From assembly GCF_001194135.2 (NCBI RefSeq), contig NC_068985.1, forward strand, positions 64,012,165-64,076,164: a stretch of 64,000 bases of DNA, in the 5' to 3' direction. Of this stretch, positions 1 to 51,595 are shown piece by piece. Within the stretch, counting starts at the first letter, position 1. Each line of letters opens with the position of its first letter. The notes beneath the pieces were generated by a model that made no database searches, was not told the DNA's origin, and saw only the letters and a list, made by a program, of their open reading frames with translations. Source of the stretch: Octopus bimaculoides (Eukaryota). The translations under genes and the position numbers were made by a program.

Positions 1-1300
1 TATTAAGATTAGATTATTTGGGTGCTAGTTGAGTGTATGTCTATTCAACATATTTTGCATCTTAAAACTTATCATCCTTTATGTATATTGATTAAATATC
101 CATTATTGGTCTCTTCATGATTATAGTGAATTTTTTTTTAAAAATAATCTTAGTGCTTACAATATTGTCATAGGTTTATTAGCATAGACTAAGTAGTTTA
201 GATTCCTCTATAAACAATCCCATATACTATTTTGCTATGTTATAATGTGTAATTTAGTTTGAATTCATATGATTACATATTGAGGATATCTTAAATTCAT
301 GTATTTGGTATAATTATATTTTTAAAAGTATCCTTTGTTATCAAGATTACATATCATTTATGTTGCTCTTGAAATTGGTTTTTTTATATATAAAAATGTT
401 TTTTGATAAGTCATAATCAATTTAATATTTTGCTCTGGTTTTTTTTAAATCTCTATATATACTCACATTTATGAAAGAGCTAGATTTACCTCCCCTTGAC
501 CATCAATATGAAAATAGTATTTATCGCCAGTTTGTCAAGGCATAATATCTTTCTCTTATAATATAACTAGCTTTATATGTATTGTCTGTTTTTTTTTTTA
601 ATATATATTGTGATATTATTTAGTGTTCTTACTTACTACTTTATTTAATAGTAATCACTAAATTTGTAAATCATAATTTTATTTGGGGATTTTTTGAGAT
701 GTGACCGGTTTTTTTGTTTACGGTCTCTGCGCTAACGTAGTAATCAATAAATCTGTCTAATTTTCTTCGGTATATTTAACTTTATCACTTAGCTAATTAA
801 CTTTATTCTTTTGTAACTTGTTAACTATAATTTGAATGTATTCTAATGTAGATATTTTATTCTCTATAACCTAGCAGGCTTGAATAACCATATATGGCTT
901 TTTACTTATAAATACTAAATTAATATAAGGCTTTTTTAGATTATGTATACTTAAGTTGTTTATTGAGTATATTATATATAAGCATTACTTATTAGATATA
1001 CTTCTATTTGACCAGGTACTTGTATTTAAAATGTATTTTTTAAATATCTAACTGTTTTTTTCTTTGGTCTGTATTTTGTATTTATAACTCCAACGGTCCT
1101 TTTCAAAATGTACAGCGTTCCATATTGGTTCATTACCGAACTTCATAGTTTAACATCATAAATTTGAATCATTTGCTTGATATGTTTCATGGTTTCAACA
1201 CTGTTATCATGTACGGTTGTATTACATCTCATGTCTTTTCAACTTGTTTTTTTGCATGTTTTTATAGGTCAAATAAAAATGTTGTATATGAATGTTATCT
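1..1300 (-). mobile_element. Highly decayed L1/Tx1-like LINE relic
   Basis: Frameshifted IKL.YK...LTNWR near 520-580 resembles the L1/Tx1 RT N-terminal motif; many stops. Confidence 0.3.
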
Positions 1301-1419
1301 ATTTTTATTGTCTGCCTGCTACTAATAAGGCACTGAGGAGATGCAGTATCCCATATTTTATAATATGCATGAATCAATCTGGATATTGCATCGAAATGTT
1401 CTGCACCGTGAGGACCAAA

Positions 1420-3052
1420 GACTTGAGGTATTATTATGGGGTGTGTTCCTAAAGTCAACCAGAAATGTTGAACTGTTGAGAAATTTTTTTAACTTGTGTC
1501 TTATATCTATTGTTCAAATTTCTTTGAAATCGCAAATATATGAATGTTCACTGGGTTTGTAAAAGAAAGCAAAGTTAGAGGAAACCAAAAGATGAATGAT
1601 CACAACAAGCAGTCAGCTACCCTACCCTGGTCGTTACCACTCCTCAATGTAGGATTCTTCACCATACAGGTGACCAGCACAGCCGTAAGATGCATTACAG
1701 ATCTATAGCAATTGGAAGGGTATGACACAACTCAAATAAACATTAACAATTCTGTGACATGAGAGCTAAGGGGATATGAAATTGTCACCTCTGGAGTTTG
1801 CCAATGATCACTATGCTGATAGGTAATTGAAAAAACAAATTTGCAACCTATAAATCTCTTTGAATGACTAATCACTTATCTGGAAAGGCCTTGATATCAA
1901 TGTTACCATCTGGGGACTATCTCTGACCTAGTGATAATAAAAAAGACTCAAAGGAGGTCTGCAACCAAATAACTTTATTCAAAATAATACTTTGCAACTG
2001 AATCAGTGGAGGCAAAGATGCCTCTCCTTTACTTGACAATTTATGCACCACATTGCAGAAATCACAATCTAAGTATATCTGAAAGCAAACTCTTACACTG
2101 TTGTACCATTGAATTACAAATAACACTCATCTTGTATCCTTGGGTGACTCTACAAATTCCAAGACTACAATTGTATATGTCTTGGCTTAGGAAAAATGAC
2201 TAAATTGTGGTTGTTAAGCCCCCATTAAAGGGTCTTACTAACCTCCTAAGAAGTTGAAATTTTAGGAATATTACTTCATTCGTGTCTAATCTCTATGGTT
2301 AAAATTTCATCAACAGCAAAACTATATGAATTTTCATGGGGGTTATGGCCTCATTTATGCCCCCTCACTTTCAAACATATACTGCATTACATCCACCCTT
2401 ATGCATAGAATATAATTTCCAAATTTCCTAAAGATCCATTCAGTACTTTTGAGCTAGTTTTGGATCATTAAAAATTACTAAAATTTGAGAGTTAAGGCCC
2501 CCATTAGGAGGTCTTAGAATCTTCATGAGAAGTGGAAACTTTGGGAATACTTCTTGATTTGTGTCAATTACTTATGGTTAAAATTTCATCAACATTGGAA
2601 ATTTATAAATTTTCATGGCGGGGTTTAAGCACCCTCAAATTCAAACCAAACATACTGCATTATACCCACCCTTATCCATTGAACCTAAGTTCCAAATATC
2701 ATAAGGATCCGTTCAGTAATTTTGGTCCATGAAAAATAACTAAAATTTGGGGGTTAAACCTTAATTTGGTGGGGGTCTTAGAATCATCCAAAGAAACGGA
2801 AATTTTGGGTGTATTTTTAAATTTATTTCTAATACATATAGTTCAAATTTCATCAAAATCCGAAGCATATGAATTTTCACTGGGAGTTCTACCCACCTTT
2901 ACGCCCCCTCAAAATTTGCATGAAACATGTGGCATTACCTTTCTCCTTAAGCTTGGATTTTGTGTTCCAAATTTCATTAGGATTGGTCCAGTATTTTTTG
3001 AGTCTATAAGTAACACGCGAACACACAGACATTGACTTTTATATAATAGACG
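1420..3052 (+). mobile_element. Non-autonomous Helentron/HINE-like element with about 290-bp internal tandem units
   Basis: Related units occur at about 1430-1560, 2200-2480, 2480-2760 and 2760-2900. The 3' end reads attggtccagtattttttgagtcta...acacacagacattgacttttatataatagac, typical of DINE/HINE-like ends. Confidence 0.45.
1590..2190 (+). mobile_element. Decayed LINE APE-endonuclease fragment nested in the above
   Basis: LNVGFFTIQ, ...TIYAP and a frameshifted LGD motif; multiple stops. Confidence 0.4.
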
Positions 3053-3371
3053 TATGTATATTTTATATATATATATTTTCTTATACTTGTTTTATTCACT
3101 CCAATCATTGTATTTCACTATGGAAGTATTTGATCAAAAAGAACATGGTAAGATGGGCAAATTGATTGGCCTCGTGAATATGTGTGTGATTCCTTTCTAT
3201 TGGATTTTCCTGTTTCTGAAGAAGAGCATTGCTCGAAATGTTAAATCATCTTTCTTTCCTTCCCTGAGCATCTGCTAATACTTTCCATGTACCACGTCCT
3301 TACATTGTTGGTTTTTTTTTTTGTGTTTGTTCTTTCTTTTTTTTATTTACTATATTCATACTAATTATAGT

Positions 3372-3433
3372 AAATCTCACTGATGAGGGCTAAGTATTAA
3401 TTACAGAGCCTGAAATTGATCGATATGGGATTT
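3372..3433 (+). ncRNA. Minimal type-I hammerhead ribozyme (PLE-type)
   Basis: aaatctca-CTGATGA-gggct...agcct-GAAA-ttgatcga-TA-tgggattt. Stem I is 8 bp, stem II 5 bp, and stem III is near-palindromic. Predicted cleavage is after A3425. Confidence 0.6.
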
Positions 3434-3434
3434 G

Positions 3435-3620
3435 GGGGAAAGGTGCAAGTTGATTATATCAATCCCAGTGTCCAACTGGTACTTTTTTTATTGACCCTGA
3501 AAGGATGAAATGTAAAGTCGACCCCAGTAACATTTGAACTCGGAACATAAAGTCGGAACAAATGCCACAAAATATTTTTTCCAGTGTAGTGATGGCTCTG
3601 CCAGTTCACTACCTTAGTTT
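3435..3620 (-). mobile_element. tRNA-derived SINE (family A) fragment
   Basis: attgaccctgaaaggatgaaatgtaaagtcgacc...tttgaactc is shared with copies at 23.9k, 27.4k and 60.2k. Confidence 0.8.
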
Positions 3621-3854
3621 AATAACTACTAACAAGTTCTTTTGTTTTGTTTTCCTTTTCTAGTTACATTTCCAATAATGTTCAAGTTAATTTTCCAATG
3701 AAATTTCCTCTAAATATTGTAGCAAGAATAATTTCAAGGAAGTATGAAAAATAGACAGGCTGATAAACTTTAATAATATCATTGTAGCTAACTTTCAACC
3801 ATTTGGATAAAAACAATCATCATTTTACACTTATTTTACCTTGTGGTATGGGTG

Positions 3855-4850
3855 GGAAGAGGGCCTAGCTTTGGGTTCACCATTATCACAAGCAATGGCA
3901 AACATATACATAGAATACTTTGAGAACATGGCTCTAGAATCAACACCACAAAACCAAACCTATGGCTATGATACATTGATGACACCTTCACACTCTGGCC
4001 CCATCAGGAAGATGTCCAAGTACAGCTGGATTATGTGAATTCAATAAGACCATCCATACAGTTCGCAATGGAAAGAGAAAAGGACAATCAGCTGGCATTC
4101 CTGGATGTACTATTAACTTGCACAGAGCATAGGTTCAAGACATCTGTATACGATAAGCCAACCATCACAGGATAGTACCTCAACTTCAATTTCCACCACC
4201 CACATAGTATAAAGAGAAGGATTGCTCATTGCCTACAACATCAAGCAAAGACTATAAGAAGCAATCCTGACATGTACCACCAAGAAATGATCTGGTGTAA
4301 CTATTCACCCCAGCTATGTAACTATCCCTAGGTAACTATCCACCCCAGCTAGGAGGAGAGAAACAGATGAAACCCAAGAAAAAATCTGCCACAGTATGTC
4401 TACCCTATGTCAGAGGACTCTCAGAAAAGATACAAAAGACATGTGGTCCATAGGATATCGGGATTCAGAAGTAATTTGACACTTTGTTGACATCTCTTCC
4501 AAGTGAAGTTCTCCATAGAAAAGAATATGACCAAAGACTGTGTGCATTTCATCCAATGCAGCTGTGGTAAGGTATACAGAGGAGAAACATGCCACCCCTT
4601 AAAATAAGTATAGATGCACATAGGAAAGTCATGACATAAGAGGGTATTAAAAAGTCAGGTATAGCTAATCACATATGGAAAAATAGAGACCACCAACCAC
4701 TGTGGGACGAGGTCAAAATAGTAGAGAGTACCACTGGAAAATTAGAAAACTGAAGGAAGCAATACATGTGCTAGGACATAACAACCTCCTGAGCAGGCCA
4801 AGTGTAGAGATGAATACAATATGGGAAGCAATAATTAAGAAAGGACAGAC
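3855..4850 (+). mobile_element. Penelope-like element relic (RT C-half plus GIY-YIG)
   Basis: EGLALGSPLS..MANIY, WLRYIDDTF, QLAFLDV, YLNFNFHHP, then C.CGKVY.GET...H..W..KEAIH; frameshifts and stops present. Confidence 0.88.
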
Positions 4851-5372
4851 TTCCACAATAGACATCAGGTTTATGCCTTAAGAATTCACTCTGTAACTGC
4901 CTACAGGCATAGTGTAGTTGATAAAGACATTGGTTATTGCAGTGCAATCACCTAGAGGTTTTGAGTTCAATCCCTGGCAATGTACTAAGGCAATTCACAT
5001 AATTCAACTGAAGCAAAAAATATCATGAAACAGAGAGAGCAGAATGAGAACAATGTACCCTAGTAGATCAAATAATGGGTTAGGTTTGAACAAACTGAGT
5101 TCAGCACAAGACAACTGAAGAAGGTTGGAGTATACAACAACCAAAACATAGTGAAAGTAACAACCAAGATGACACCAGTCAAAAACTATATACATAATAT
5201 AAATTCCAAAACTATATACATAATATAAATTCCACATCTCAGTAACACAGCTATTATCTGTCAGTACTTAGAATCCTCATTATAAGCTAACAGATTACTT
5301 CTGTCACAAATATAAACCCACTACAAAACCATTCATGTGAACACAGTTGAAAATTCTCTCCACTATATTTTG

Positions 5373-5405
5373 ACTTACCTGAAATTAAAGAACACTGTAT
5401 TTACA
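5373..5405 (-). promoter_or_regulatory. Candidate recursive splice site 2 (junction between 5379 and 5378)
   Basis: Minus strand reads gtaaatacagtgttctttaatttCAG|GTAAGTca, in apparently non-repetitive sequence. Confidence 0.55.
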
Positions 5406-6260
5406 CAAGTACAACATGAGTCATATACAGACATTTTGTATTTAAAAATTAGTAACACTTTTAACATGTTACCTATATCTTTATACCCAAGATTTCTTGC
5501 CATATACACAAGTATATACAGTAAACAGTACATAAGAATGCTTTTTGCTGAACTGTACCTACTAAACATCTTTACATCTTAAACTGAAGCATTCTCCTGG
5601 ATAACTGAATCTTCAACATTCTCACCAATGCACATTCCTCTGTTAAACCAGGTAAACATAGCTCTGAGCTAAAACCTCAAAATACCATAAAAATATGTAC
5701 TGAACCCACATTGTATAATCTCTTTGCCCATCAGATGTTCTCAAACATCAACTAATGAGCAACTGGAATCATCTAATGATGGTGATGATACTAACAGACA
5801 AAAACCATCAAAAACACAAATATTCAAAGAAAGTAAGTAAATGGAATTTTAAAAGATCTAACCTAATTTATGAAGAGTTGATTTCAACAAATTCTTGCTA
5901 AACCATCCCACCCACCAAACATGCACACTTTTGCCTTTAAAATTTTATAGTAATCAATGGTGACTCATCCTCCTATCAAATGTTACAGATTTAACACTTA
6001 GTGGTGTTCAGCTGTTTAAAAGGAGTTTTACTATTTATAAAGGAAAGGCAGCAGGAAATGGTATGTATACTTTTTAATACTAAGATTACATATCCCAAAT
6101 CCTCACAGGAGTTTGGTGAACATAAAAATGTTAGTCACTATAGCACTGGCATTTAAAATTTTAAATAGATTACTAAGTTTTCTGAGAATATATATATACA
6201 CATATATATGATACAAGAGAGAATCACTGAAAGTGTAACTAAACATACATAATAATAGTA

Positions 6261-7486
6261 TTGGGTTGGCAACCAAGTTCCCGCGGTCTTTTTTAAATTT
6301 AAATTTTAAAAAAAGTTTAATAAAAATAACAACTAATTAATCAATAATGTATTCACCCTTGTTGTTTACAACTTCTTCCCAACGTTCAACAAGATCTTTA
6401 ATACTCGTTGGTAGAAATCACCCGATTTCGTCTCGAAAAATTGATCCAAACAAGCTCTCAATTCTGCATCAGTATTGAACAAAACTCTGCGCATAGCATT
6501 TGAAAGAGATCGAAAGAGGTGGAAATCCGTTGGTGCCAAATCAGGAGAGTACGGCGGGTGTGGCAGCACTTGCCAGCTATGTGTTTGGATGGCTTCCTTG
6601 GTTATATTGGCAATATGAAGGTGGGCGTTGTCGTGTAGCAGAACTCCATGCTGCCGATTAGGTCTTTTCTCTTGAATAGCCATGTTGAGATGTTCCATCT
6701 GTTGAACATAGAGTTCCGCATTGACCGGTTGGTTCCATTCAAGCAATTCATAATGGATAATCCCTTCCCAGTCCCACCATACGCACAAAGATCTTGTTTC
6801 ATGTGCGGTGTTGCCTGTTTACTGGGGGCTAAGCCATTCCTTACGCTGCTTCATATTGATGTACAAGCACCATTTTTCATCACCAGTAATGATTCAGTAA
6901 AGAAATCGTTGCTTGTGTCCATGAGTTGAGCAGTGACAAGCAAGCAAACTAGTGGAGTTTGTGGCTCGTTGATTTTTGTTGTTGTCACTTAAAGCATGCA
7001 GAACCCATGCTCCACGCTTCTGAACCTTTCCCATCTATTGAAGATGCTTCTCTATAGCAGCATGGGAGCATTCCATTTTCTCTGCCAGTTCCCTTGTCGT
7101 TTGACGAGAATTTTCATACAAAAGTTGGTTTAATTGCTCTTCATTGAACTCAACTGGACAGCCAAAACGAGGTGTGTCTTTGAGGTCAAAATTTCCATTT
7201 TTGAACTCGGCATACCAATCACAAGTAGCTCTTTCAGCTATGGCACCCTCTCCATACACAGCACAAATGTCGTGAGCAGCTTTTGCGGCCTTAGAACCTT
7301 GATTAAAAACAAAACGAAAAAGGTGTCAAAAATGCCCGTTTTTCTTAACTTGGCATTCCATTTTAATGATCTGAAAATAAACAAAAATTAACTAAAATTA
7401 ACTAGAAAAAAAAATAGATTCCAAAATTTAAAAACGCAATAAATTCCAAATTTTAAAAAATGGCGGGAACTTAGTTGCCAACCCAA
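6261..7486 (-). mobile_element. Mariner (DD34D) element, full-length but pseudogenised
   Basis: TIRs ttgggttggcaaccaagttcccgc / gcgggaacttagttgccaacccaa with TA on both sides. Transposase motifs VTGDEK, HDNA, PHPPYSPDLAPTD give 34 residues between D2 and D3. Confidence 0.95.
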
Positions 7487-7769
7487 TATAATGTCACTGA
7501 AAACTAGTAGTAACAGAAAAGATATAAAACTGGTTTAGTGAATCAGGTATAAACTTAGGGCTTTGAATTTATACATTAATGGAAACATTTTATTGCATTT
7601 TGGAACAAAATAATAAAACTATTTTAGTTTACATCAACAGAGAATAGGTAGTATCTATATCAGTTGTGAAAAGAATTTATTTATAAAAGACCAGCAGATT
7701 ATCCAGGACATAAGTTGTCTTCATTTGCTTAACACTACATGAGTTAAACAAAATACACACACACAAATG

Positions 7770-7868
7770 CATATATATTTGTGTGTGTGTGTGTGTGTAT
7801 TTATATACACACATGCATACAAATACATATACACACACACACATATGTATGCATTCATGTACATTTAT

Positions 7869-7903
<35 letters not shown>

Positions 7904-7960
7904 TTCATGGACATTTATATACACACAGGCATGTGTGTATGTATGAATGTATGTACGTAT
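7770..7960. repeat. (TG)n/(CA)n compound microsatellite
   Basis: Direct observation. Confidence 0.95.
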
Positions 7961-7980
7961 GTCTTTCACCCTTTGATTGC

Positions 7981-8258
7981 TCTTATTTTGTCCTGCAGGG
8001 TGTCCAACAATCACCCTCTTCACGAAGCAAGCTTGATGGAGTTGCCAGTTTAGTCGCCAACAGCCTGACCATGCAACAGGTTGTATTGAGTTACATGCTA
8101 CCAGTGGTATGACAGATCGCTCTTGGGTACTACAGGTAACATGTAACCCAGTACAACCTGTTGCATGGTCGGGATGTCAGCAACTAAACTGGCAACCCCA
8201 TCAAGCTTACCTGGTGAGGAGAGTGATTGTTGGACACCCTGCAGGACGAAAAATAAGA
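7981..8258. repeat. Foldback inverted repeat, about 117-bp arms and about 42-bp loop (MITE-like)
   Basis: 7981-8097 (tcttattttgtcctgcagggtgtccaacaatc...gttgtattgagttacatg) is the imperfect reverse complement of 8140-8258. Confidence 0.9.
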
Positions 8259-8562
8259 CCTATCAAAGGGTAGAAGAGATCATGAGTAGTCAATGGCCAT
8301 CCAACAATATGTATATACATGCATGGGGACGTGGAAAAACCTGGGTTCGTGTCCAGATGTACAGTTGATCTACTGGGTGTTGGAGGCCCCTCTGTTGTCA
8401 CATCTCTCTAGGAGAGGGAAACACTGAGAGAAAACCTGCGGCACTGACAATATTTGATAATGTAGACTAGTTCTTTTTGAATTTATGTTGTCCAGGTTCA
8501 CAGAGTGGGGCTGGATTTGTGCAAATCCTTTCCCCACTATAAAAAAAAAATCATCATGCACA

Positions 8563-10886
8563 GGTGCTATGTCTGTCCGACGTCACTTTGTCAAACATCT
8601 TTTTGTCCACGTCTTTTTGTCCGATGATTTTTTTGTCCAATGACTTTTTGTCCAATGACTTTTTGTCCAATTTTAAATAAACTCTTTAGAAAACATGGTG
8701 AAATATCTCTAATGATATATTCACAGAACTAGAACAAGCCTCATTATAGGATTGTTATTATCGTTTTTTTGCCTTTTCCGTTAACAGTTTTACTTTCTCT
8801 TTTCCCTTCTCTCTTTTAAATATGGTGTTGTGTATAGAGAGTGCTGAAAATTTAGTGTACACACTTTTAATTTACCCATCTCGAAATGACAAAATTCATA
8901 GTATTGATCAAAAACAAAAGTAAAGCAGTTGATGAAAGTAATTACATCAACGGCTTTCATTCAAGCAATACAAAACTAGGAAAAGAATACTAGAGATGTG
9001 AGAAAAGAAGGCTGTGTTCAGTGTGAATTCACATGCTAACAGAAAACAATGAGCCAAAAATTATTTATTTTTCTAGTGAGCACCTTCATCCAGCTGGTGT
9101 AGATTTCTTAAATGCTAGAAAAGCAGTTGCAGAAATAAAGCATGAAGTGGTGGAAAACATAGCAGCAAGTTTATGCAGCTAACAGAAAATACTTACTCCC
9201 AACTTCTTCATTTGTCTGTACTTTGCAGACAAAAATATTCTGGATTTCATGCTAATCCAGGGGCTAGATCTGGTTATGAAATACCTGAAGACTATTATAA
9301 ACTTGATAATAGCGAACAGTTTCTGAGATATGACTTGGGTATCAAGGATCAACAGTACATACTAGTATTTGCATCAGAAAGTACTCTTCAGGATATAGCA
9401 TTATATCATCATTGGGCATGTGATGGAATGTTCAAAATTGTGCCACAACAGTGGTTTCAACTGTTTGGCATCCATGTACAAGTTAAAGGTAGCAGTTTTC
9501 CACATTACTTGCATTACTGCTGAATAAAATAAAGTAGACATGAATTATTTTTTGAGCAACTGAAAATTATGCAACCTAATGCATATCCACTTGATCTCAT
9601 GGCAGATTTCGAAGTTGCAGTTCAAAAGGCATTTAATTTATTCCCTAGTTCATCTATCATGGCATGTTTATTTCATTTGAGCCAATCAGTATTTTCAAAA
9701 ATTATATAGATTTAGGCCTCAAAGAAAAATACAACAAAAGCACTCAGCGCAAACCTCTGCCAAGGCAACACCAACGTCCTCTCAACAATTAGCCAGAGAT
9801 GATTTTAAAATGAGAATATCTGAAATAAACTTGACTGCTCTCACAAACAAGAATACTAGAAATGAAGCTGACCACTCTCAAAAGTTAAGTAAAAAAACAG
9901 GAAAAATAATCCAGAATCCTTGTCCAGTACCAGATCGATCCCAAAATCTAATCAGTTCAAGCCAGTCCCTGAAACATTCCTGAAAGTTTCATTCGAATCC
10001 ATCCAGTGGTTCTTGAGATATCTTGTCCACAGGTAAACAGACAAACACAACTGAAAACAATACCTCTACCTTCGCTAAGGCAGAGGTAATAAAGATTCTG
10101 AACTCTGTCTTAAAATTCGATGCTTTTAAGCATTAGCCTTCCAACCCATTAAAGATGTTGAAGAGGCCTATGAAGAATTAATAGACAATGAAAAAACACC
10201 TGCTGAATTCATTGCTTACTTCGACTTGACTTACATAGGCATTGTGAGAGGACATGATTCTAGATGAAGAGAACCACCTACATTCCCAATAACTGTATGG
10301 AATGTGAATCAGTGTATTCTTCAAGACCTTCTCAGAACAAATAATGCTGCAGAGAGGTTTCATTCTGTGATAAAGCATTCGGCGGGTGGAGCATATTTGA
10401 ATATTTGGAAATTAATCTGAAGGAAGAGGAAAAACTCGTTCAAGGTAAAACAACTCAAATTCTTTGTGGAGATCCATCAAATTCATGCACACAGTATTGA
10501 AGAATAACTGAATGCCTCAAAAGATTGATCTCTGAATATGGGTCAACAAGAAAAACTGATTTTTTGAAGAGTGTGGCATATAATTTGCATCAATTTTAAG
10601 TGATCATAATAAATCATTAGTTATATCTTATTACTTTTTAAAATGACTTTTTTAAGATACATGTTTTCAGAATTTTACTTGAATCTTATCAATAAAATTG
10701 TCAACGGTTATTTGATTTTGATGTTCACCTTGTTTTCTAAAGAGTTTATTCAAAATTGGACAAAAAGTCATTGGACAAAAAAAATCATTGGACCAAAAGA
10801 CGTGAATGAAGTGACATTGGACAAAATGATATTGGACAAAATGATATTGGACAAAATGATATTGGACAAAAAAGTCGGGTCACACC
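8563..10886 (+). mobile_element. Mutator-like (FLYWCH-MULE) DNA transposon, pseudogenised
   Basis: Long TIRs with tandem ttggacaaaa subrepeats at 8563-8702 and about 10725-10886. Protein motifs WACDGMFK..PQQWFQLFGIH, ADFE.A, CLFHLSQS, RTNNAAERFH. No clean TSD seen. Confidence 0.9.
9737..10090 (+). mobile_element. Helentron-derived non-autonomous element (HINE-like) inserted in the MULE ORF
   Basis: 5' cactcagcgcaaacctctgccaaggc; 3' hairpin tacctctaccttcgctaaggcagaggta (10061-10088). Excision restores KYNKDSELCLKIRCF with no TSD. Confidence 0.75.
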
Positions 10887-11049
10887 TATCACAAAAATGG
10901 CCAGTCATAGCTTTTTCATATGTGAGACTTTTGATCAGGTAATGGCAATACTCAAACACAAGTTTGCAGCCATCATATGTATGTATAAATGTGTATGTAT
11001 GTGTGTGTGTACTGGTATATGAGAGTATGTTTATATATACGTATTCTTT

Positions 11050-11377
11050 TATTCTTTTGTTTCAGTCATATGACTGCAGCCAAGCTGGAGCACTACCTTT
11101 AGTCAAACAAATCAACCCCAGGACTTATTCTTCGTAAGCCTTTTACTTATTCTATCAGTCTCTTTTGCCAAACTGCTAAGTTACGGGAATGTAAACACAC
11201 CAACATCAGTTGTCAAGCGATAGTGGGAGGACAAACACAGACACACACATATATATGACGAATTTCTTTCAGTTTCCATCCACCAAATCCACTCACAAGG
11301 CTTTGTTCGGTCCGAGGCTATAGTAGAAGACACTTGCCTAAGGTGCCACACTGTGGAATTGAACCCGGAACCATGCT
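11050..11377 (-). mobile_element. tRNA-derived SINE (family B)
   Basis: gtttcagtca..gactgc.gcca.gctggagcact...gctatagtagaagacacttgcc.aaggtgcca is shared with copies at 32.5k, 57.3k and 61.6k. Confidence 0.88.
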
Positions 11378-12798
11378 TGTAAAAATATACAAGCTTAAAC
11401 TTTACATTAAATTGAAGGATTACTCAATGCACTTAGAAGAGTACATATTCATTATTCATTAACAAGAATAGTACTGACAGTGACCTCGAAGTTTCAGTCA
11501 GGTAAAACATCGTCAGACAGTTTGATGGTGGTTTAGCAGGCCAGAAAACTTCAATGTTGCTGTCAATACTGTTCTTGATAAAAGAATTTTATACATAAAA
11601 CCTGGATGTTCTTTAATATACATGCCACCAACATATGTTGGTTTATATTGGAATAGTTTGGCTAAGTCTACAGTATGGCATATTGACAAACCCTTCAATT
11701 CTGTGTGATCTCATCAGTAGGAACCTGATATTCTAAGTTCAAATCCCACACCTTCATAGAATATAATTTTAAAGTTTATATTACTACTAGCAGAGATATC
11801 AGGCATTGCTTGGGATTAAAATGACATAGTTTGTATATATAATACAGTTAAGCTGAAACGTGATACGGGAAAGTGCAGCATTGATGACAAAACATCTGAG
11901 TAAATGATGGGCAAATTCGACTAAGCGACATGTCATATGTCCATTTGGAGGATTCCAGTCCCTAACCAGTCATAGAAAAATGGTGTTGAGGAGGGGGAGA
12001 TGAATTTTGAACACACCAAAAAACTCTCAGTGGATATTCTCTCATTTGCGGCCGTCAGCGCTGTTGCTACCACACTGAACAATCAGCAGATATGGGACTT
12101 ACATCTATGTGATAAATTAAGCCCTTGGATGCACTCAACAACACCACGAGAGAAACCTACATGAAAGAAATGGCATGGTAAAGGGGTGGGATTTGCAAGG
12201 CAGCGCTTGAAATCAATGACACGGTCTCTAACAAATGTGGCGTTGGGCTGCTGACATGGTTGAGAATCAATAGTTGTGGCTCAACCATGCATTCCTTTGT
12301 GTAAACAGCATACAACCATTGGGAGGACAACTCTGCTCCCAAACAAAAACAATTCTGCATGCAAGGTCACATTAAGGACATGAGCTCTAACTAACATGCT
12401 TGGGTCTTTGACACCATAAATTAGTATGCTAATGTACATGCAATATTTTGGTTTGTAATCAATAGCTGAAGAATATTTGCATGGACTCAATCTATGCTTA
12501 GAAAGAAGCCTTGATACTGAAGTTAAAAGAAAATAGTTGAATAGCTGCTAAAGATTTAACATATTTTAGCATATTTTTCATAATAAACAATGCGTTCCAA
12601 ACAGTTTTTATTCCAACAAATTGCTTGTTATGGTACTATGGGAACAGGCTGTTATTGTTACTACTTAGACAATGCGGTTTGAAGTTTACATTGGTTCATC
12701 CATTTAATACATCCTACTTATATAATTTCAGTAGCTGTTTTTCGCAGTTTGAACAAGCAATATGTGGACCATGTGAGCAGTCATTCGTATCCCAAGGA

Positions 12799-13135
12799 AG
12801 GGGGTTTTCTGCCCCCTGGGGCCCTATTACTTATTACATGAAAAATTTTAAGAGTCTAAAACCATCTCTGGTACATAAGTAATGTATGTTCCCAGTTTGG
12901 AGAAAATCAGTTGCGAACTTCAGAAGTTCTGCAGGTCCTCAATTTTATATATAGAAGTAGAGAAATTAACATAATTATGTCATCAAGAGTAATATCCCTT
13001 GAGCCTATGAAGCAACCAAGTTATGCAATTGTTCCTATTGTTTACCCAGGAAAGGGGGTTTTCTGCCCCCAGGGGTCCCATTACTCATTATGTGAAAAGT
13101 TTTACGAGTCTAAAACCATCTCTGGAACATAAGTA
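12799..13135 (+). repeat. Imperfect direct repeat, about 85-bp core at about 252-bp period
   Basis: aagggggttttctgcccc...gagtctaaaaccatctctgg.acataagtaa at 12799 and 13051. Confidence 0.8.
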
Positions 13136-13208
13136 AAGTAAAACTTCAGAAGTTATGCGGGTTTACACACAAACATCCTCAGTTTTATTTTTATTTATAT
13201 ATATATAT

Positions 13209-13250
<42 letters not shown>

Positions 13251-13469
13251 GTAGTGTTGGATCAAAACAGAGTTGAGGAAAATGCTTTGCAGTATCTATT
13301 CTCACTCTTTATATTCTTGAGTTCTAGTCCCAATAAAGTGAACTATGTCTTCCATCTGTTTAAGGATCCATAAAGTACCAGTAAAATACTGAGGTCAATG
13401 GCATCTAATGCTCTCGCCTTAAAAATACTGACCTTGTGCCTAAATCAGGAACCTTATTATTATTTTTAA

Positions 13470-14170
13470 GGCAGCAAGCTGCCATACCTAACAAATTTCT
13501 TAGTAGCATTTCTCCTAACTTTGTGTTCTGAGTTCCCATTCAGCAGAAGTCTACTTTACTTTTCATCCTTTCAGGGCTGATAACACAAGCATCAGTTGAG
13601 TGCTGAGGTTGATGTAATTGACTAACCCCTCCACAAAAATTTATTGTAGAAAGAATTATTACTATTATTTTTATTATATTATTAAGGCGGTAAGCTGGCA
13701 GAACTGTTGGGCAAAATGTCTGGTGGTTTTTAGTCCATCTTTATGTTCTAAGTTCAAATTCTGTTGAGATCATCCATTTGAGGTCAATGAAATAAATACC
13801 AGTTGATCAGTGGGGTTGTTCAATCTACTAACTCATCCCCTAAAACATCTCAGGCCTTGTACCTGTAGTAGAAAGATTATTATTATAATTGCATGAGGGT
13901 GCATGGCTTAGTGGTTAGGGATGTTGCATTCACAATCTAGTCTGGGTGAGGCATTGTGTTCTTCAGCAAAACACTTCATCTCACATTATTCTGCGACCAC
14001 TTTGATACCTGACATGTGATACACCATGCACCTGTTCAGGCAACATCGATTTGATGGGGAGAGTGAGTTAATGTGTGGCACGAACATGTGATCACTATAA
14101 ACAAATGATTTGTGCAGGTTGTTAGGTTAAAGCTGAACACTTATACGTCATCTTTGACAGGAGAGTCCAT
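13470..14170 (+). mobile_element. Cluster of three SINE copies or fragments
   Basis: Two family-A heads (aaggc.g..agctg.c...) at about 13470 and 13685, plus a tRNA-like head gcatggcttagtggttagg at about 13900. Confidence 0.65.
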
Positions 14171-17100
14171 CATTATTGTTGTTGTTGTTATTATTATGTA
14201 AACACAGGTTAATTATACTTGGCAGTATCACAATTACAAAGCAACAGGACATTTAATTCAACCATCATCATTTAACATCTATGTTCCATGCTGGCATGGC
14301 TGGAACTCTTGCATGGGATTTGAATATAACAATGGTGAGTGTAAAATAAACCTTTGAATGGACACAACCATATGCTCACACAAACAACTGTATTAGACGA
14401 TATGCACTCATGCACACTACTCTTATTAGACTGTAGACACAGAAACCTGTCTATATAAGGCCACACACACACAGTTTAGTGGTAGTAACATCTGATTTGG
14501 TTTGAATAGTCTGAGATTAATGACTACATCAGAAGTTTTATAAAGATGTATATCTAAAAATAAAGGACTGAGTAGAGCGTTCAGATGAGAGGATGAACTT
14601 AATAGAAAAAAAAAAGAGTACATTAAGAGAACATACAGTTAGAGCTGAAGCATTTTGAGGAAGACAACAGTGGAATAGACTTTGAATGGAAGTTTGCTTA
14701 TCAACAAGACAGCATTTTTTGTTGTATCTGGCTTACAACGGTTGCATGTGAGAAAGGAGGTTGTGTGCGTGCATTCAAGTGAACATTGTATGTACTGATA
14801 AAAGAATATTTGCTTGAAATGAATCCTGGAAACAGCTTATCATGATTACTCTTCTACATTTTGCCAAATACCACAAAAGAAAATATCAAGATTTGCTTTT
14901 ATATGAAGCAACATTTTTCCAAAATTAGAGAGATTTATTTCTCTGATACTAGAAATTGAGATTTATGAGGGCTGTGTAGCAAAGTCACTAGAGATTCCAT
15001 CTTTGTTCCAAAAGATTGTTATTTTAGTAAATCAAAATGGAAACAGCAAAATATTCTTGCTTCCCGCATCCCCACACACACACACACACACACACACAAA
15101 CTGTTCTCTCCTATCCCTAACAAATTTTTAACTGTTTTCTACATAACCAATTTTGGATGCAGTCAAGTCCAAATGAACCATAAAACAAAACAAAACATCC
15201 TCAAAATGATATCACAATTTTTACTACAGTAATTCTTACAAACAAATACAATTTTACAAATACATTTTTTAGAAATGTGCCATTTATCCTTTGAAAATCT
15301 CAAGTGAAATCAAAACAAATACTTTTATTCTTGTCTGTCACTGTCCGAGATAACACCAAGTCAAACCAATTCTAATTACTTGCACCAAAATACCGAACAT
15401 ACTTTATATATTACAGAATAATGTATCACTGACATAATCAGTAAAATTGGTGCCTATGAGGGGTAATTCTCAAATTATGTTGTTCTAAAGACAAGGAGAA
15501 ATAGAAAGGATCAGTGATGCTGAATTGAACATTAACCCAGATAGTTCTCTCCATAAGTAACTAAATCTTTATATAACCCAATAGAAAAAAACGAGAAACA
15601 TTAATACATAAACCTCATTGAAGAAAAAACTTTAGCAATATCAGAAATACAATTAAAAAAAACTATAACAGAACTCCCTATACCAATGACATTTTAATAG
15701 TTTTATGCACTCACTGGACCAATGGAGAATGTAATATTGGAATGATAGACAAAGTTGCTAATCACAGAAGTAAATGTCTTCTCTGTTAAACTGTATTTAC
15801 CATAAATTTTTATTACAAATTCTTATAAAAAGAAAATGAATATTTCTAAAGACTTTGGGAAAGAAAAATGTTTGAATTTTAAAGAATCATTTTCCTGCTT
15901 AGTCAAAGGAACTATGTATATCCAAATGTAGTGGCAGGGATAATCTGATGTTAATCCAACTGAACATTATACAGACTGGTTTATTCCCTCTATTTATAAC
16001 AATAAATCCTACTGTTATATTTCATTGATACAGTAATAATCTGGTTAATTCTTACTATAAAATGATGTAAAATAGACTGCTACTAAGAATCTCACATTTA
16101 GCTCTCAACTCCAAACATTGCTGTAGTTATCTAAATTTGTACACTTATTAAATCTATAATAGAAATTGCTTATTGCTATACATCTGCTAAGTCCATAGAA
16201 CAAATAAATTGTGCAAGGGGAGTACAAATGGTCTCATTAAAGATGTGATTTATAACAAAACAAGAAATGTATTTGCCAGAGATAAAAAAAAATTCAATCA
16301 AAAATATTTAAATAATTACAATCTAATTAGAAAGGTGCACTGAATGTGTATTCTTTGGAATAAAACTGTGGAACTGATTATGTGTCCACCTTCCCAACTA
16401 TTTTGCAACAAGAGCAGAAACAACCTCATATGATAATTAGGAAAATATTTCAAAGAAGTTGTTCAAATAATATATTTGTTTCATCTGATGATCATACTGG
16501 CTTGAAACTCAAGTTGCAAGACAAACTCTTAGCTTCGGTTTTAATAAAATAACTATATTAATAAACTCTCAGGTTCAGTTTTAATAAGATAACTATATTA
16601 ATTAGCGAGTAGAGCTCATGGAAATATGAAACTTTTTAAATGGTTATAAGTTTCTATTAAGCCATAAAAATTAGTGTTCCTTTATAAATTGTATAAGCTG
16701 CATTATTTTTATTTAAAAACACCTTTCATTTCTCTCAGCAGTTCAGAGGTTCATTTATAAATTTAAGAGCTTCACAATGTAACATCCAACCATATGTTTT
16801 CAGTTTTCATGATGTTCACTCTCATTTTCATTTTATATTCTATTCTCTTAACTGTTGTAAATACTCTGTACTCTTTGACTTACATTTTCCCTTCTTCACA
16901 CTGATGCTCCCGAACTTGTACTAGTGTTTTGACCCTCTGCTTCTCTTTATGTTGTTGCCTATACTGTCTCATTCTTATTCTTGTTAGCTTACATCGGTTG
17001 TCATCCATATTTTATAAACAAATATCAATTTTTAAGTGAGCAGATGGTAAATAATTGTACTTACACACATGTGTTAATTGATAAGCAATATCAAAAATTT

Positions 17101-17329
17101 AGTTCAATTAAAAGAAAATTATACAAACAAAGCTCAGACTAGATTGTTTCCCAACCAAGATTAGTCCATTTCACAGTCCACATCACCACTGAGGCTGTTT
17201 TTATAACACAATGCTTTGATGTTATGGGAGATAAATATGGCTTTGACAAGTAAAATAAACTCTAGTTTCGTAGTTTTGCAACTCTGGTAAAAAAAAGTTA
17301 TGTTTTTTGATTTTGAGAGAAAATAAAAG

Positions 17330-18960
17330 AACCAGGGTCATTAGTAGTGTATTTTATCACTTATTGAAGTTACCTTCATCATTATTGCCCGAAGTATCCC
17401 TTTCACCATCACTAACTTCATCTTTGAACTCTTCATCATCTTCAATGGCTCTAATATGCTTGTAAAGCTTATTCAGATGAGAATTGGCATCCTTGGACTG
17501 TTTTGCTCTCTAGATTCTGAAATGATGCATACAGTCATGCCAGTACTTGCTCAAAGGTAGTGTTTGTGGTGTACTTCCCACTTCTCCCCTGACTATAGCC
17601 CATATGAGCTCGGTTAGCTGCAAATCAGAATGATGTGGTGGAGAAAAGATGACCTCATGACCTCTTTCTCTTGCCATGGAACAAACAATTGGAAGAACAT
17701 GTAGTTTGTTGTATTCCTACAGTTTTTCTCATAGCACACACTTCAGATCTCCTGCTTCGAATGGAATCTCTCATTCTTGACATGCCACCTGCATTTGAGC
17801 CTTCTTCTGCCATCCTTGTGGTGTTGTTTCAGGGAGATTTGAGTGACATTTGGCATTATCCATCACAATGACAGCGTTATTAATCCCTTGGTCATCAACA
17901 GCTTTGAAGAGCTTTTCCATTCACTCAACAAAATACTTGTGGTTGAACATCCTATGGTAGTCTCCTACAAAGACATGCAGAGTGTCCTTCATTAAGTGAG
18001 CCACTTGATTTTCATTTCAAGCTTCTTCTGGCACAGTGCTGTCAACATCAATAATGGCCATGATGAAACAGTGTTGCTTTCCTTTGTGTTGTGTTTTCAC
18101 TTGTTGATCCAGCTCATTGTTTAGATCATACAAACTGTCATCATGACAAGCATAATTTTTGTGAATATAGCTTTCATCCATGTACACAATTCATCACCTC
18201 TTTGCTGTGTTGAGAGGAACTAATTTGACTGTATAGAGATCCCACTTATGAATGTTCTCAGCTCAGAGCTTGTAGTACAGCATTCCTTTCCTCTTTTCAT
18301 GACGGTATCCTTTTTGCTTAAGGAATCTTTGAACAGATTGCAGAGCTGCTTGGACTTGGTTTGGTTGATGATGAGCAACAGCAATGAAACCATTCTGGAT
18401 ACAGCAGTCTATCACATCCCGAGCAACAGTCCTAGTGTGAATCGCTTGACAATCTCTGAGAGATTTCTGGATTATGGAAGTCACAAGATGAAGATCAGGA
18501 ACTACCAAAGCCACTGGATTTTAATTTCCAGTCATCTTCTGCTCTGAAATTTCTCCAGTCTGAACAAATTTGTTCCAGATTTCGCTGCAGAACTTATTAC
18601 TTCAACCAAGGATATTCGCAGTATGGTTCATGGCATCTGCATTCTTCATTTGCCCAGGTCTCTTATTATTGTGCAGCACGACATGTTTATGATGAAACTT
18701 GGCATGTACAGAGAGAATATCCAGCTTCTCCTCCTTGGTAAGGCTCCCAGGTTGATTTATTTTCATGAAAGTCTCCTCAGATTTGAGAAACGGTTTATCC
18801 ACAATCTTATGAGTCTTCATGGGCATGTAAGAAACATTTCTCTGTCTATTGTTTCTTTTCGGCTCCAAAACACGATCTTCAACTTGATCCTTTTCTTCAT
18901 TTCTCTCCATAACTTTTGATCTGGAGGGGAAAGAAAACTAAAGGTGCAAAAGGAAGATCT
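17330..18960 (-). pseudogene. Sailor-type (DD82E) IS630-Tc1-mariner transposase relic
   Basis: VYMDESYIH (D 18178-18176), IVMDNAK (D 17860-17858) and SPPHHSDLQLTE (E 17611-17609). Exactly 246 nt (82 codons) lie between D2 and E. Several in-frame stops; TIRs not identified. Confidence 0.85.
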
Positions 18961-19505
18961 CAACAAGCACTATTTAACAATATAATGGGTTTAAACTAGC
19001 AGTAAAAACTGACTGAGTAAAACACAAAATAGGCCTCAATAGTGTCGCAGATTGTCAGTTCAGCTCAGTATTTGTTTATATCTACTTTTGTTGCTATCAA
19101 TACAAAGTTTGAATAACAAATTTTTAAAAAACAATAACATCCACAGCTATTTTGTTAAGTTATTTCACTTTCATTGAAAAATCTACATTTTAATCTACTA
19201 TAAGCTTTCCTTCTTCCATCCAGTCATTAATGAATTTGTCAATGTGGATAGATAAATAGATCAACAGATAGAAGATATAAAAAATTCAATATTAAAATGC
19301 TATTGTTTTTTGTTTTAGTCACAATAATATATGATGTTTAAAATTTGCCTCTGCTAAACACTTTATATTTTACTACCTCTTCAACAAACTTTTTAACCAT
19401 GTCATTCCTCTCTTCAGGCAATTTATCATTTCTCTCCTTACCTTTCACTTCAACTCTCACTTCCACTAACCACAAGATAGCTTAATGCATTGACTGATAA
19501 TAATA

Positions 19506-19539
<34 letters not shown>

Positions 19540-23668: not shown

Positions 23669-23899
23669 TATCTATGTATATATCTGCACAGAGAGACAGA
23701 GTGACAAAGATCTATTTAAAGATCAAGGCATATCAGAATGAACCACCCCACACTTGGTGCGTAAACAGACACAAATCCACAGATAAACAATTCATTCCAT
23801 TAGTGAAGGGCTCAGTGAAGGGAAGTTCACTGGTGTTTGGTAATATGCAAATCCAAGTGCATCAAAAACAGAGTGAAATTTTCAGTGTGGTATAATATA

Positions 23900-24120
23900 T
23901 TATTTCTTCTCTAGGTGCAAGGCCTTGAAAAGTTTTTGGGGAAGAGGGTTAGTCGATTACATCAACCCCAGTGCGTAACTGGTACCTATTTCATCGACCC
24001 AGAAAGGATGAAAGGCAAAGTCAACCTTGGCAGAATTTAAACTCAGAATGTAGCGGCAGACGAAATACTGCTAAGCATTTTGCCCAGGGTGCTAACGATT
24101 CTACCAGCTCACTGCCCTAA
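23900..24120 (-). mobile_element. SINE family A
   Basis: Matches the reverse complement of the 60198-60420 copy. Confidence 0.85.
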
Positions 24121-25659: not shown

Positions 25660-26235
25660 CAGATCATGAAAGTTATGGAGAGAGCTGTAGCACAATTAAA
25701 TAGAAAATTAATTAATGCAGATGAGATACAGTTTGGTTTTGTACTAGGGAGAAGTACCACTGATGCTATCTTCTTAGACAACTGCAGGAAAAGTATTTAG
25801 CTAAGAGTAAAGCATTATACTTGGCATTTGTTGACCTGTAGAAAGCCTTCAATAAAGTCCCTCACTTTGTGATATGGTGGTCTCTGAAGAAGCTAGGAAC
25901 AGATGAATGAATGGCTTGTGAAAGTTGTACAAGCCATGCACAGGGTTTTTTCCAGTAAAGTGAGAGTTAGTCATGAGTACACTGACAAATTTAATATGTA
26001 GGTATGACTTCACCAGAAGTCAGTTCTCAATCTCCTTCTATTAATTATTGTCCTCCAGACCATACCAGAGGAATTTAAGACCAGCTACATGCTGATATCA
26101 TGCTCTCATGTAAGAATCTGTAACAGAATTAGAAAAGAAATTCAAGATGTGGAAGCAAAACCTGCACTTAAAGGGTTTTAAAGTTTAGCAAAAAACCAAG
26201 GTTCTAGAGGGCAAGGAAACAGATGGAACCATAAT
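25660..26235 (+). mobile_element. RTE LINE RT fragment
   Basis: MKVMER..AQL, DEIQFGFV.GRSTTDAIF, QEKYLAK, AFVD, W.L.KLG; same family as the 49k and 58k copies. Confidence 0.8.
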
Positions 26236-26239
26236 TCTG

Positions 26240-36415: not shown

Positions 36416-36443
36416 ATATATATATATATATGTATATATATAT

Positions 36444-39511: not shown

Positions 39512-39542
<31 letters not shown>

Positions 39543-51590: not shown

Positions 51591-51595
51591 ATATA

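What the first reader, a model, noticed from the sequence alone, without database searches (positions are those of the whole stretch)
5373..5405. Second CAG|GTAAGT site about 30 kb further on, suggesting a spaced recursive-splicing ladder
Seen: minus-strand tgttctttaatttCAG|GTAAGTca, the same 9-mer as site 1, same strand, in apparently unique DNA. The intron would be cut into about 20.1 kb, about 29.8 kb and a remainder. By eye I saw no equivalent tract-plus-CAGGTAAGT on the non-transcribed strand (not exhaustive). Read-through from exon 1 gives RKSKYSGENFQLCSHEWFCSGFIFVTEVIC*, which lacks the conserved QRFP.KDW, so this is not exon 2. Inference: multi-step recursive splicing may be how transposon-inflated cephalopod introns are handled.
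Basis: partly seen in the sequence, partly recalled or inferred. Interest (0 to 1): 0.75.

Follow-up and report, generated by a model that had tools for sequence, protein, structure and literature searches.

The report
Likely chance splice motif in intron
A perfect splice-junction-like 9-letter word sits deep in the very long first intron of an octopus-like Sbf/MTMR13 gene, but taken alone it is about what chance would give, so a second "recursive splicing" stop here is possible and unproven.

Summary
The sequence is exactly as described. CAG|GTAAGT lies at 5373-5381 on the minus strand. This is the sense strand of intron 1 (over 55.3 kb) of an Sbf/MTMR5/13 orthologue. The only other copy in the window is at 35211-35219, on the same strand, and the segments are 20,090 and 29,838 nt.

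The two sites are not equivalent. Site 1 has a textbook acceptor: it is in the top 0.2% of sense-strand AGs, has a 71-nt AG-free zone, and no site of its grade arose in 1000 null sequences. Site 2 has only the perfect donor word. Its acceptor half is ordinary (top 9% of AGs, and 30% of sense CAGGT sites score as well). A competing AG lies 16 nt upstream, and there is no convincing downstream donor for an RS-exon.

A site of this grade arises by chance in 19% of null introns. The pair together gives P of about 0.02.

Conservation and RNA evidence could not be obtained. No orthologous cephalopod sequence was reachable, and no exon 1-to-site 2 product exists in the protein collection.

My verdict is that site 2 is most likely a fortuitous consensus match (about 0.55). 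A genuine second ratchet point remains possible (about 0.25). If real, it would be a new member of a known mechanism (flies, vertebrates) in an unreported lineage.

The parts
5373..5381 (-). Site 2: CAG|GTAAGT 9-mer. The junction lies between 5379 and 5378, and the donor-like hexamer GTAAGT is at 5378-5373.
   Evidence: Donor half scores 8.7 bits (+1 to +6). The full native 9-mer scores 12.8 bits. Regenerated with exon 1 as AAC|GTAAGT it scores 7.5 bits.
5379..5394 (-). Acceptor-like half of site 2, tgttctttaatttcag. The same 16 nt are the hypothetical microexon.
   Evidence: Acceptor PWM score is 4.6 bits, reached by 9% of sense AGs and 30% of sense CAGGT sites.
5395..5399 (-). Upstream TACAG. 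This competing AG lies 16 nt before the site 2 AG and shortens the AG-free zone to 14 nt.
   Evidence: As an acceptor it scores 2.8 bits.
5290..5378 (-). Read-through reading frame after site 2 (KSKYSGENFQ...VIC then a stop). The only nearby donor candidate is GTA|GTGGGT, 57 nt downstream, with its G at 5321.
   Evidence: The donor scores 4.5 bits (weak).
35211..35240 (-). Site 1: ttatttttgtttttctttCAG|GTAAGT. This is the credible ratchet-point candidate on which any ladder depends.
   Evidence: Total 21.3 bits, the best on either strand. Acceptor is in the top 0.2% of sense AGs. AG-free zone is 71 nt. Branch-point-like TTCAT and TTTAT lie at -39 and -32. No null sequence in 1000 reached this grade.
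55307..55361 (-). Coding part of Sbf/MTMR5/13 exon 1: MSRLADYFVVVGYDHEKE plus the first base of the R codon.
   Evidence: Homologue P0010 is named myotubularin-related protein 5/13.
55301..55306 (-). Native donor of intron 1, AAC|GTGAGT.
   Evidence: Scores 8.2 bits. The exon end and phase are conserved in dozens of invertebrate read-through ORFs.
1..55306 (-). The part of Sbf intron 1 held in the window. The intron runs off the window start, and exon 2 is not present.

Best explanation
Site 2 is most likely a fortuitous match to the splice-junction consensus in non-repeat DNA deep inside Sbf intron 1. In the nascent transcript its perfect 9-nt complementarity to U1 snRNA will probably attract U1, as happens at other intronic pseudo-donors. 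Its acceptor half is not good enough, and its context not distinctive enough, to conclude that exon 1 is routinely spliced to it.

If the intron is removed in steps at all, the step that the sequence supports is exon 1 (55307) to site 1 (35216). The regenerated donor AAC|GTAAGT would then pair with the exon 2 acceptor beyond the window start, with site 2 at most an occasional cryptic stop.

Shown here: the motif, the gene, the geometry and the chance statistics. Inferred: U1 binding and lack of use.
For: - A site of site 2's grade (acceptor at least 4.5 bits and donor at least 8.6 bits) arises at least once in 19% of 1000 local Markov nulls of this intron. The expected count is 0.21. Scaled to the 35 kb downstream of site 1, this is about 13%.
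- The acceptor half is ordinary. It scores 4.6 bits, which 9% of 3214 sense AGs and 13 of 43 sense CAGGT sites reach, and it has 12 of 20 pyrimidines. Site 1 scores 12.6 bits (top 0.2%) with 16 of 20 pyrimidines.
- The AG-free zone is only 14 nt, against a median AG-to-AG gap of 9 nt. Site 1 has 71 nt, beyond the 95th percentile. The only good branch-point-like word (CTCAT, A at -39) lies upstream of the intervening AG.
- No donor of 5 bits or more lies within 400 nt downstream. The best is GTA|GTGGGT at +57 with 4.5 bits. Fly and vertebrate recursive sites use a downstream RS-exon donor (PMC8605326, PMC6110457).
- The total AGGTRAGT count (4) equals the chance expectation (4.49). The two other sense copies (23283, 27902) have no pyrimidine tract.
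- On the combined score, site 2 (13.3 bits) is matched or beaten by four plus-strand sites and two other minus-strand sites.
- In a large TE-rich mammalian genome, motif-bearing AGGT sites are almost never recursive: 20 sites, and fewer than 0.06% of long introns, in mouse brain (PMC8797253).
- No protein in a collection of 5.8 billion clusters joins exon 1 to the site 2 read-through.
Against: - The pair of exact 9-mers on the sense strand has P of about 0.02-0.025, with none on the antisense strand.
- Site 1 is far beyond chance. If it is a real ratchet point, a second one in the remaining 35 kb or more is not unlikely. In flies the number of sites grows roughly linearly with intron length (PMC6110457).
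- The host intron fits the profile: a first intron longer than 55 kb. In flies 63% of introns over 40 kb have a high-confidence recursive site (PMC6110457). Mouse sites lie in introns over 51 kb, 75% of them first introns, and are enriched for AGGTAAGT (PMC8797253).
- Exon 1 ends in AAC, a poor exonic donor half. A regenerated donor therefore needs a perfect intronic half, which both sites have.
- Site 2 lies in DNA that is not repeated in the window.
- Branch-point adenosines at -22 to -24 would sterically skip the AG at -17/-16, so that AG is not a strict bar (read from the sequence).
Confidence: 0.55

Rival explanations
1. Site 2 is a genuine second ratchet point. After exon 1 is ligated at site 1, the regenerated donor AAC|GTAAGT is spliced to the AG at 5380-5379. 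This again regenerates AAC|GTAAGT, which is finally spliced to exon 2. The intron of more than 55 kb is then removed as lariats of 20.1 kb, 29.8 kb and a remainder.
For: - The exact consensus CAG|GTAAGT is on the sense strand only, and the pair-level P is about 0.02.
- The regenerated donor (7.5 bits) is about as strong as the native donor (8.2 bits).
- Ten of the 13 bases at -16 to -4 are pyrimidines.
- The site is in the non-repeat fraction of a TE-rich intron.
- There is a precedent of two spaced ratchet points in the roughly 50-kb kuz intron (PMC8605326).
- The host intron class fits both fly and mouse recursive introns (PMC6110457, PMC8797253).
- A 57-nt, frame-preserving RS-exon ending at GTA|GTGGGT is conceivable.
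Against: - The acceptor is ordinary, an AG lies 16 nt upstream, and the AG-free zone is short.
- The only downstream donor is weak.
- The single-site chance probability is 13-19%.
- There is no conservation or RNA evidence of any kind.
- Recursive splicing has not been reported in cephalopods or molluscs in the searched literature.
Confidence: 0.25
2. Site 2 is a selected or tolerated U1 snRNP landing site. It would act without splicing, for example by suppressing premature cleavage and polyadenylation in a very long intron (telescripting). It would be one of a general sense-strand surplus of donor-like words.
For: - CAGGTAAGT is the perfect complement of the U1 5' end (established knowledge; also PMC8797253).
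- In this intron GTAAGT is 16 sense to 7 antisense (one-sided P = 0.047), GTRAGT is 29 to 15 (P = 0.024), and AATAAA is 69 to 89 (P = 0.065).
- All of the signal at site 2 lies in its donor half.
Against: - The asymmetries are weak.
- From base composition (my own estimate, not a tool result) about 19 sense and 17 antisense copies of GTAAGT are expected, so the asymmetry is closer to an antisense deficit than a sense excess.
- The orientation of the TEs that fill the intron could produce it.
- One window cannot establish selection.
Confidence: 0.12
3. Site 2 is the donor of a real but unannotated, cryptic exon. The candidates are the 16-nt interval 5394-5379 behind TACAG, or a longer exon ending at 5379. 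Such an exon would be a poison or non-coding exon of Sbf, or would belong to another minus-strand transcript.
For: - There is a perfect donor with an AG 16 nt upstream.
- In mouse, most non-recursive AGGT junction candidates turned out to be unannotated exons: 46 of 84 (PMC8797253).
Against: - The TACAG acceptor is weak (2.8 bits, top 16% of AGs).
- Sixteen nt would shift the Sbf frame. The 64-aa ORF that ends at the site is in the wrong phase for exon 2, and it has no homologue.
- Homologues join exon 1 directly to the SG..ILQRFPEKDW exon.
Confidence: 0.08

Closest known systems
Drosophila intronic ratchet points (Ubx, kuz, Bx and others; PMC8605326, PMC6110457)
   Same: - Acceptor and donor are juxtaposed around AG|GT with the preferred CAG|GTAAGT core.
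- The site is on the sense strand of a very long intron.
- A regenerated donor would allow stepwise removal.
- Two spaced sites in an intron of about 50 kb resemble kuz.
   Different: - Fly ratchet points have ultraconserved cores, strong acceptors and a short cryptic RS-exon with a downstream donor.
- Site 2 has an ordinary acceptor and only a weak donor at +57, and conservation is untested.
- Segments of 20 and 30 kb are longer than the fly mean of 9.1 kb.
Vertebrate recursive splice sites with RS-exons (Sibley et al. 2015 as reviewed in PMC5126111; mouse brain, PMC8797253)
   Same: - The site is in a first intron longer than 51 kb in a large TE-rich genome.
- It carries the AGGTAAGT motif.
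- The read-through contains a premature stop, as RS-exons do.
   Different: - Vertebrate sites need exon definition through a downstream donor.
- They are conserved, have high acceptor scores and are very rare.
- They sit in genes over 294 kb that are expressed in brain.
- None of this is shown for site 2.
Intronic pseudo-donors and U1 telescripting sites (established knowledge, not tested here)
   Same: The site is a perfect U1-complementary word on the sense strand of a long intron. It sits among a mild sense-strand surplus of donor-like hexamers and a deficit of AATAAA.
   Different: Telescripting sites are not defined by an upstream acceptor. No functional or genome-wide evidence is available here.
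Poison or cryptic microexons
   Same: An AG lies 16 nt upstream of a perfect donor, and inclusion would introduce a frameshift and a stop.
   Different: The acceptor is weak, there is no transcript evidence, and the length is not a multiple of three.

Membership tests
Recursive splice site (ratchet point) | [quoted passage not shown] | tested here: met
   tttCAG|GTAAGT lies at 5373-5381 on the minus strand, the same strand as Sbf exon 1 and downstream of its donor.
Recursive splice site (ratchet point) | Host intron is very long (flies over 10-40 kb; mouse over 51 kb, mostly first introns) | tested here: met
   Intron 1 is longer than 55.3 kb and exon 2 is absent from the window. Thresholds are from PMC6110457 and PMC8797253.
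Recursive splice site (ratchet point) | Acceptor half stronger than ordinary intronic AGGT sites (pyrimidine tract, 3' splice-site score) | tested here: not met
   It scores 4.6 bits, which 9% of sense AGs, 12% of sense AGGT and 30% of sense CAGGT sites reach. The AG-free zone is 14 nt. The PWM is generic and not trained on cephalopods.
Recursive splice site (ratchet point) | Regenerated donor is functional after ligation to the upstream exon | tested here: met
   AAC|GTAAGT scores 7.5 bits against 8.2 bits for the native AAC|GTGAGT. This is sequence prediction only.
Recursive splice site (ratchet point) | Short cryptic RS-exon closed by a downstream donor weaker than the ratchet-point donor | tested here: inconclusive
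   Only GTA|GTGGGT at +57 (4.5 bits). Nothing of 5 bits or more lies within 400 nt.
Recursive splice site (ratchet point) | Evolutionary conservation of the AG|GT core above the flanking intron | not testable with these tools
   No orthologous cephalopod sequence could be reached. The ORF-probe search gave 0 hits and the exact look-ups found nothing. The one long contig with exon 1 comes from an unrelated genome with 46% GC.
Recursive splice site (ratchet point) | RNA evidence: exon-to-site junction reads, segment lariats, sawtooth read density | not testable with these tools
   No RNA data are available. The indirect test found no protein joining exon 1 to the site 2 read-through, which is weak because recursive intermediates do not reach mRNA.
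Cassette or poison microexon | Usable acceptor and donor flanking the exon, with transcript evidence | tested here: not met
   The donor is perfect, but the TACAG acceptor scores 2.8 bits, the exon would be 16 nt (a frameshift), and no product was found.
Sbf / MTMR5/13 gene (host) | N-terminal uDENN start MSRLADYFVVVGYDHEKE with the conserved phase-1 exon end, followed by the ..ILQRFPEKDW exon | tested here: met
   Exon 1 is present. Homologues include one named myotubularin-related protein 5/13 and show the exon 2 sequence. Exon 2 itself lies outside the window.

The most novel reading that the evidence does not exclude
Both CAG|GTAAGT sites are used. Intron 1 of an octopod Sbf gene, longer than 55 kb, would then be removed by fly-style multi-step recursive splicing. 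That would make this the first recursive-splicing ladder seen in a lophotrochozoan. It would also hint that cephalopods preserve islands of ratchet points while transposons inflate the DNA between them.
Probability: 0.22. Interest if true: 0.5.

Novelty: not a real feature. Interest (0 to 1): 0.2.

Why it matters
Recursive splicing is established in flies and, rarely, in vertebrates. Whether it is ancestral to bilaterians, and whether it scales with transposon-driven intron growth, is open. Cephalopods have vertebrate-sized TE-rich introns on an invertebrate background, so they would be an informative third lineage.

A real ladder here would extend a known mechanism to a new clade. It would also give a concrete locus to test with nuclear RNA-seq. 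Site 2 alone does not carry that weight. The useful output of this check is that site 1 (35211-35240) is the candidate worth testing, and that site 2 should not be counted as evidence until RNA or comparative data exist.

Tried and rejected
1. Exon 2 in the window: regex and tblastn with exon 2 peptides of homologues gave only noise. The total intron length, and so the evenness of the spacing, cannot be judged.
2. TE origin of the sites: self-BLAST found no repeat at either site. The nearest repeats are a mariner at 6259-7488 and a LINE 3'-end fragment at 35808-35900.
3. Transcript evidence through proteins: a chimeric query of exon 1 plus the site 2 read-through found 44 exon 1 read-through ORFs from other animals and none continuing as KSKYSGENFQ.
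4. Orthologous DNA:
   - Exact look-ups of the two ORFs spanning site 2 and of three other window ORFs found nothing on record.
   - A 706-aa probe made of six-frame ORF segments around both sites gave 0 hits.
   - The only long contig with exon 1 (L001) is from an unrelated genome with 46% GC and has no AGGTRAGT in 20 kb.
5. Further rungs: the other sense AGGTRAGT sites (23283, 27902) lack pyrimidine tracts. CCAG|GTAAGC at 8210 lies inside a palindromic MITE-like element.
6. Rfam and ARAGORN found nothing in the window.
7. Alternative coding first exon ending at 5379: rejected, because the phase is wrong for exon 2 and there is no homologue.
8. Literature: no paper links recursive splicing with cephalopods, octopus or molluscs in the held library.

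Full report
**Observation.** On the minus strand the window reads ...gtgtaaatacagtgttctttaatttCAG|GTAAGTcaaaatatag. The 9-mer is at 5381-5373 and the putative junction lies between 5379 and 5378. CAGGTAAGT occurs exactly twice in the 64 kb, both times on the minus strand. The other copy is at 35219-35211.

**Host gene.** The minus strand carries the first coding exon of an Sbf / myotubularin-related protein 5/13 orthologue.
- The exon runs from the ATG at 55361-55359 through MSRLADYFVVVGYDHEKE plus one base, and its last exon base is 55307. The donor is AAC|GTGAGT.
- A search of the protein collection returned 44 short products that share this exon. Most are read-throughs into the intron of other invertebrates, which shows that the exon end and phase are conserved.
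- Four products, one of them named myotubularin-related protein 5/13 by JGI, continue with SG.SSG.ILQRFPEKDW.
- That second exon is nowhere in the window. Intron 1 is therefore longer than 55.3 kb and runs off the window start.
- The read-through peptide RKSKYSGENFQLCSHEWFCSGFIFVTEVIC* is also correct.

**Origin.** The best named relatives of the window's LINE reverse transcriptase are from Octopus vulgaris (78% identity) and O. bimaculoides (81%). A cephalopod origin is plausible but not proven.

**Is it more than chance?**
- The tool's dinucleotide shuffles expect 0.44 copies of the 9-mer on both strands, and 6 of 100 shuffles have two or more.
- I built a null that keeps local composition: first-order Markov chains fitted to 1-kb blocks of the 55.3-kb sense strand, 1000 replicates. 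It expects 0.21 copies. P(at least 2) is 0.025 and P(at least 1) is 0.19.
- With generic acceptor and donor weight matrices, a site of site 2's grade or better is expected 0.21 times, with P(at least 1) of 0.19. A site of site 1's grade never arose in 1000 replicates.
- The pair is therefore mildly unusual. Site 1 alone is very unusual. Site 2 alone is not.
- AGGTRAGT occurs four times, all on the sense strand, but the total equals expectation (4.49). The two extra copies (23283, 27902) have purine-rich upstream sequence.

**Anatomy of the two sites.**

| Feature | Site 1 | Site 2 |
|---|---|---|
| Sequence | ttatttttgtttttctttCAG\|GTAAGT | aatacagtgttctttaatttCAG\|GTAAGT |
| Pyrimidines at -23 to -4 | 16 of 20 | 12 of 20 |
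| Acceptor score | 12.6 bits, top 0.2% of 3214 sense AGs | 4.6 bits, reached by 9% of sense AGs and 13 of 43 sense CAGGT sites |
| AG-free zone | 71 nt (95th percentile of AG gaps is 51) | 14 nt, ended by an AG at -17/-16 (TACAG) |
| Branch-point-like words | TTCAT at -39, TTTAT at -32 | CTCAT at -39, upstream of the intervening AG |

- Adenosines at -22 to -24 could serve as a weak branch point that skips the intervening AG at site 2, so this is a handicap and not a bar.
- All of site 2's distinctiveness lies in its donor half.
- On the combined score, site 2 (13.3 bits) is fourth on its own strand. Four plus-strand sites match or beat it, although those have poor donors.
- After ligation to exon 1, both sites regenerate AAC|GTAAGT (7.5 bits), about as good as the native AAC|GTGAGT (8.2 bits). 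Because the exonic half AAC is poor, a perfect intronic half is what a working ratchet point would need here. This is a point in favour.

**RS-exon test.** In flies and vertebrates, recursive sites are recognised through a short cryptic exon closed by a downstream donor (PMC8605326, PMC6110457, PMC5126111).
- Within 400 nt downstream of site 2 the best donor is GTA|GTGGGT at +57 (4.5 bits). It would make a 57-nt open, frame-preserving exon, but donors of that quality are common.
- Site 1 has nothing better than 2.2 bits within 500 nt.
- This criterion is inconclusive for site 2 and not met for site 1 with my crude matrix.

**Surroundings.**
- Site 2 lies in about 1.1 kb that is not repeated in the window.
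- On one side is a mariner element, with inverted repeats at 6259-6308 and 7440-7488 and a transposase fragment at 6366-6788 (Pfam PF01359).
- On the other side is a tRNA-like SINE head on the opposite strand at about 4905-4990, followed by a tandem duplication at 5195-5260 (by eye).
- Unique within 64 kb does not mean unique in the genome, and that could not be checked.

**Evidence that could not be obtained.** The defining tests for a recursive site are RNA intermediates and conservation.
- Exact look-ups of ORFs across site 2 and of other window ORFs found nothing on record.
- A probe made of all six-frame ORF segments around both sites found no relative in 5.8 billion protein clusters.
- The one long contig carrying exon 1 comes from an unrelated genome.
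- No product joins exon 1 to the site 2 read-through. This is weak evidence, since recursive intermediates do not reach mRNA.

**Base rates.**
- In Drosophila, 63% of introns over 40 kb have a high-confidence recursive site. Site number grows with intron length, and the mean segment is 9.1 kb (PMC6110457).
- In mouse brain only 20 sites exist, in fewer than 0.06% of long introns. They favour first introns over 51 kb and the AGGTAAGT word (PMC8797253).
- Which regime applies to cephalopods is unknown. I found no paper on recursive splicing in cephalopods or molluscs.
- With a chance rate of about 0.2 site 2-grade motifs per 55 kb of sense intron, such motifs must number in the thousands in a genome of gigabase size (my extrapolation). 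A motif of this grade therefore has low predictive value on its own. Lying downstream of a strong site 1 raises it.

**Verdict.**
- I put about 0.55 on site 2 being a fortuitous consensus match, probably bound by U1 and not a routine splicing stop.
- I put about 0.25 on a genuine second ratchet point.
- I put about 0.12 on a U1 landing site with a non-splicing role. The intron shows GTAAGT at 16 sense to 7 antisense, GTRAGT at 29 to 15, and AATAAA at 69 to 89.
- I put about 0.08 on the donor of a cryptic or unannotated exon. The 16-nt microexon reading is weak: its acceptor scores 2.8 bits and it would shift the frame.
- If site 2 is real, it would be a new member of a known mechanism in an unreported lineage, and not a new kind of system. 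The candidate that deserves an experiment is site 1.

Noticed in passing
window 35211-35240 (-): Site 1 is the best recursive-site-like motif on either strand of the window. It scores 21.3 bits, its acceptor is in the top 0.2% of sense AGs, its AG-free zone is 71 nt, and no null sequence in 1000 reached its grade. It has no downstream donor better than 2.2 bits within 500 nt.
   Followed up: partly
window 1-55306, both strands: Donor-like words are biased towards the sense strand, and the poly(A) signal word shows a mild sense deficit. GTAAGT is 16:7, GTRAGT is 29:15, AGGTRAG is 10:3 and AATAAA is 69:89 (sense:antisense). This may be a U1/poly(A)-site-axis-like asymmetry or an effect of TE orientation.
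   Followed up: partly
window 6259-7488: A mariner-type DNA transposon has roughly 50-nt inverted terminal repeats at 6259-6308 and 7440-7488 (84% identical). A decayed transposase lies on the minus strand at 6366-6788 (Pfam Transposase_1).
   Followed up: partly
window 48900-51600 and 57586-61200 (+): Two copies of one LINE family (reverse transcriptase plus PHD finger) lie antisense to Sbf, one of them just upstream of exon 1. The closest named relatives are Octopus vulgaris (78%) and O. bimaculoides (81%). One near hit is labelled Herbaspirillum MAG, presumably host contamination in that bin.
   Followed up: partly
window 35808-35900, 61087-61179, 51497-51578, 63911-63955, 57191-57270, 28753-28808: A repeat of about 90 nt is present in six copies. 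Two of them sit at the 3' ends of the LINE copies, so it is probably the LINE 3' end or a SINE that borrows it.
   Followed up: no
window ~8000-8215 (-): A palindromic MITE-like element carries CCAG|GTAAGC at 8210. It shows that a TE can supply a recursive-site look-alike on the sense strand.
   Followed up: no
window 55405-55425 (-); L001 ~9940-9955: AAGATGGCGACC, a YY1-like core-promoter word, lies about 55 nt upstream of the Sbf ATG. A similar ACATGGCGAC lies upstream of the ATG in the unrelated contig L001.
   Followed up: no
window 38068-39051 and 43227-43664 (+); ~3800-4400 (+): There are long ORFs with no Pfam match (327 and 145 aa). A decayed reverse-transcriptase-like stretch lies antisense to Sbf just downstream of site 2. 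It looks Penelope-like by eye, which I did not verify.
   Followed up: no
window 27076-27111, 36100-36109, 41699-42251, 42897-42906, 49079-49178, 52264-52903, 54298-54451, 55191-55200: Eight assembly gaps total 1513 N. One lies 107 nt into intron 1. Long (TG)n/(CA)n microsatellites are present at about 53.6 kb.
   Followed up: no
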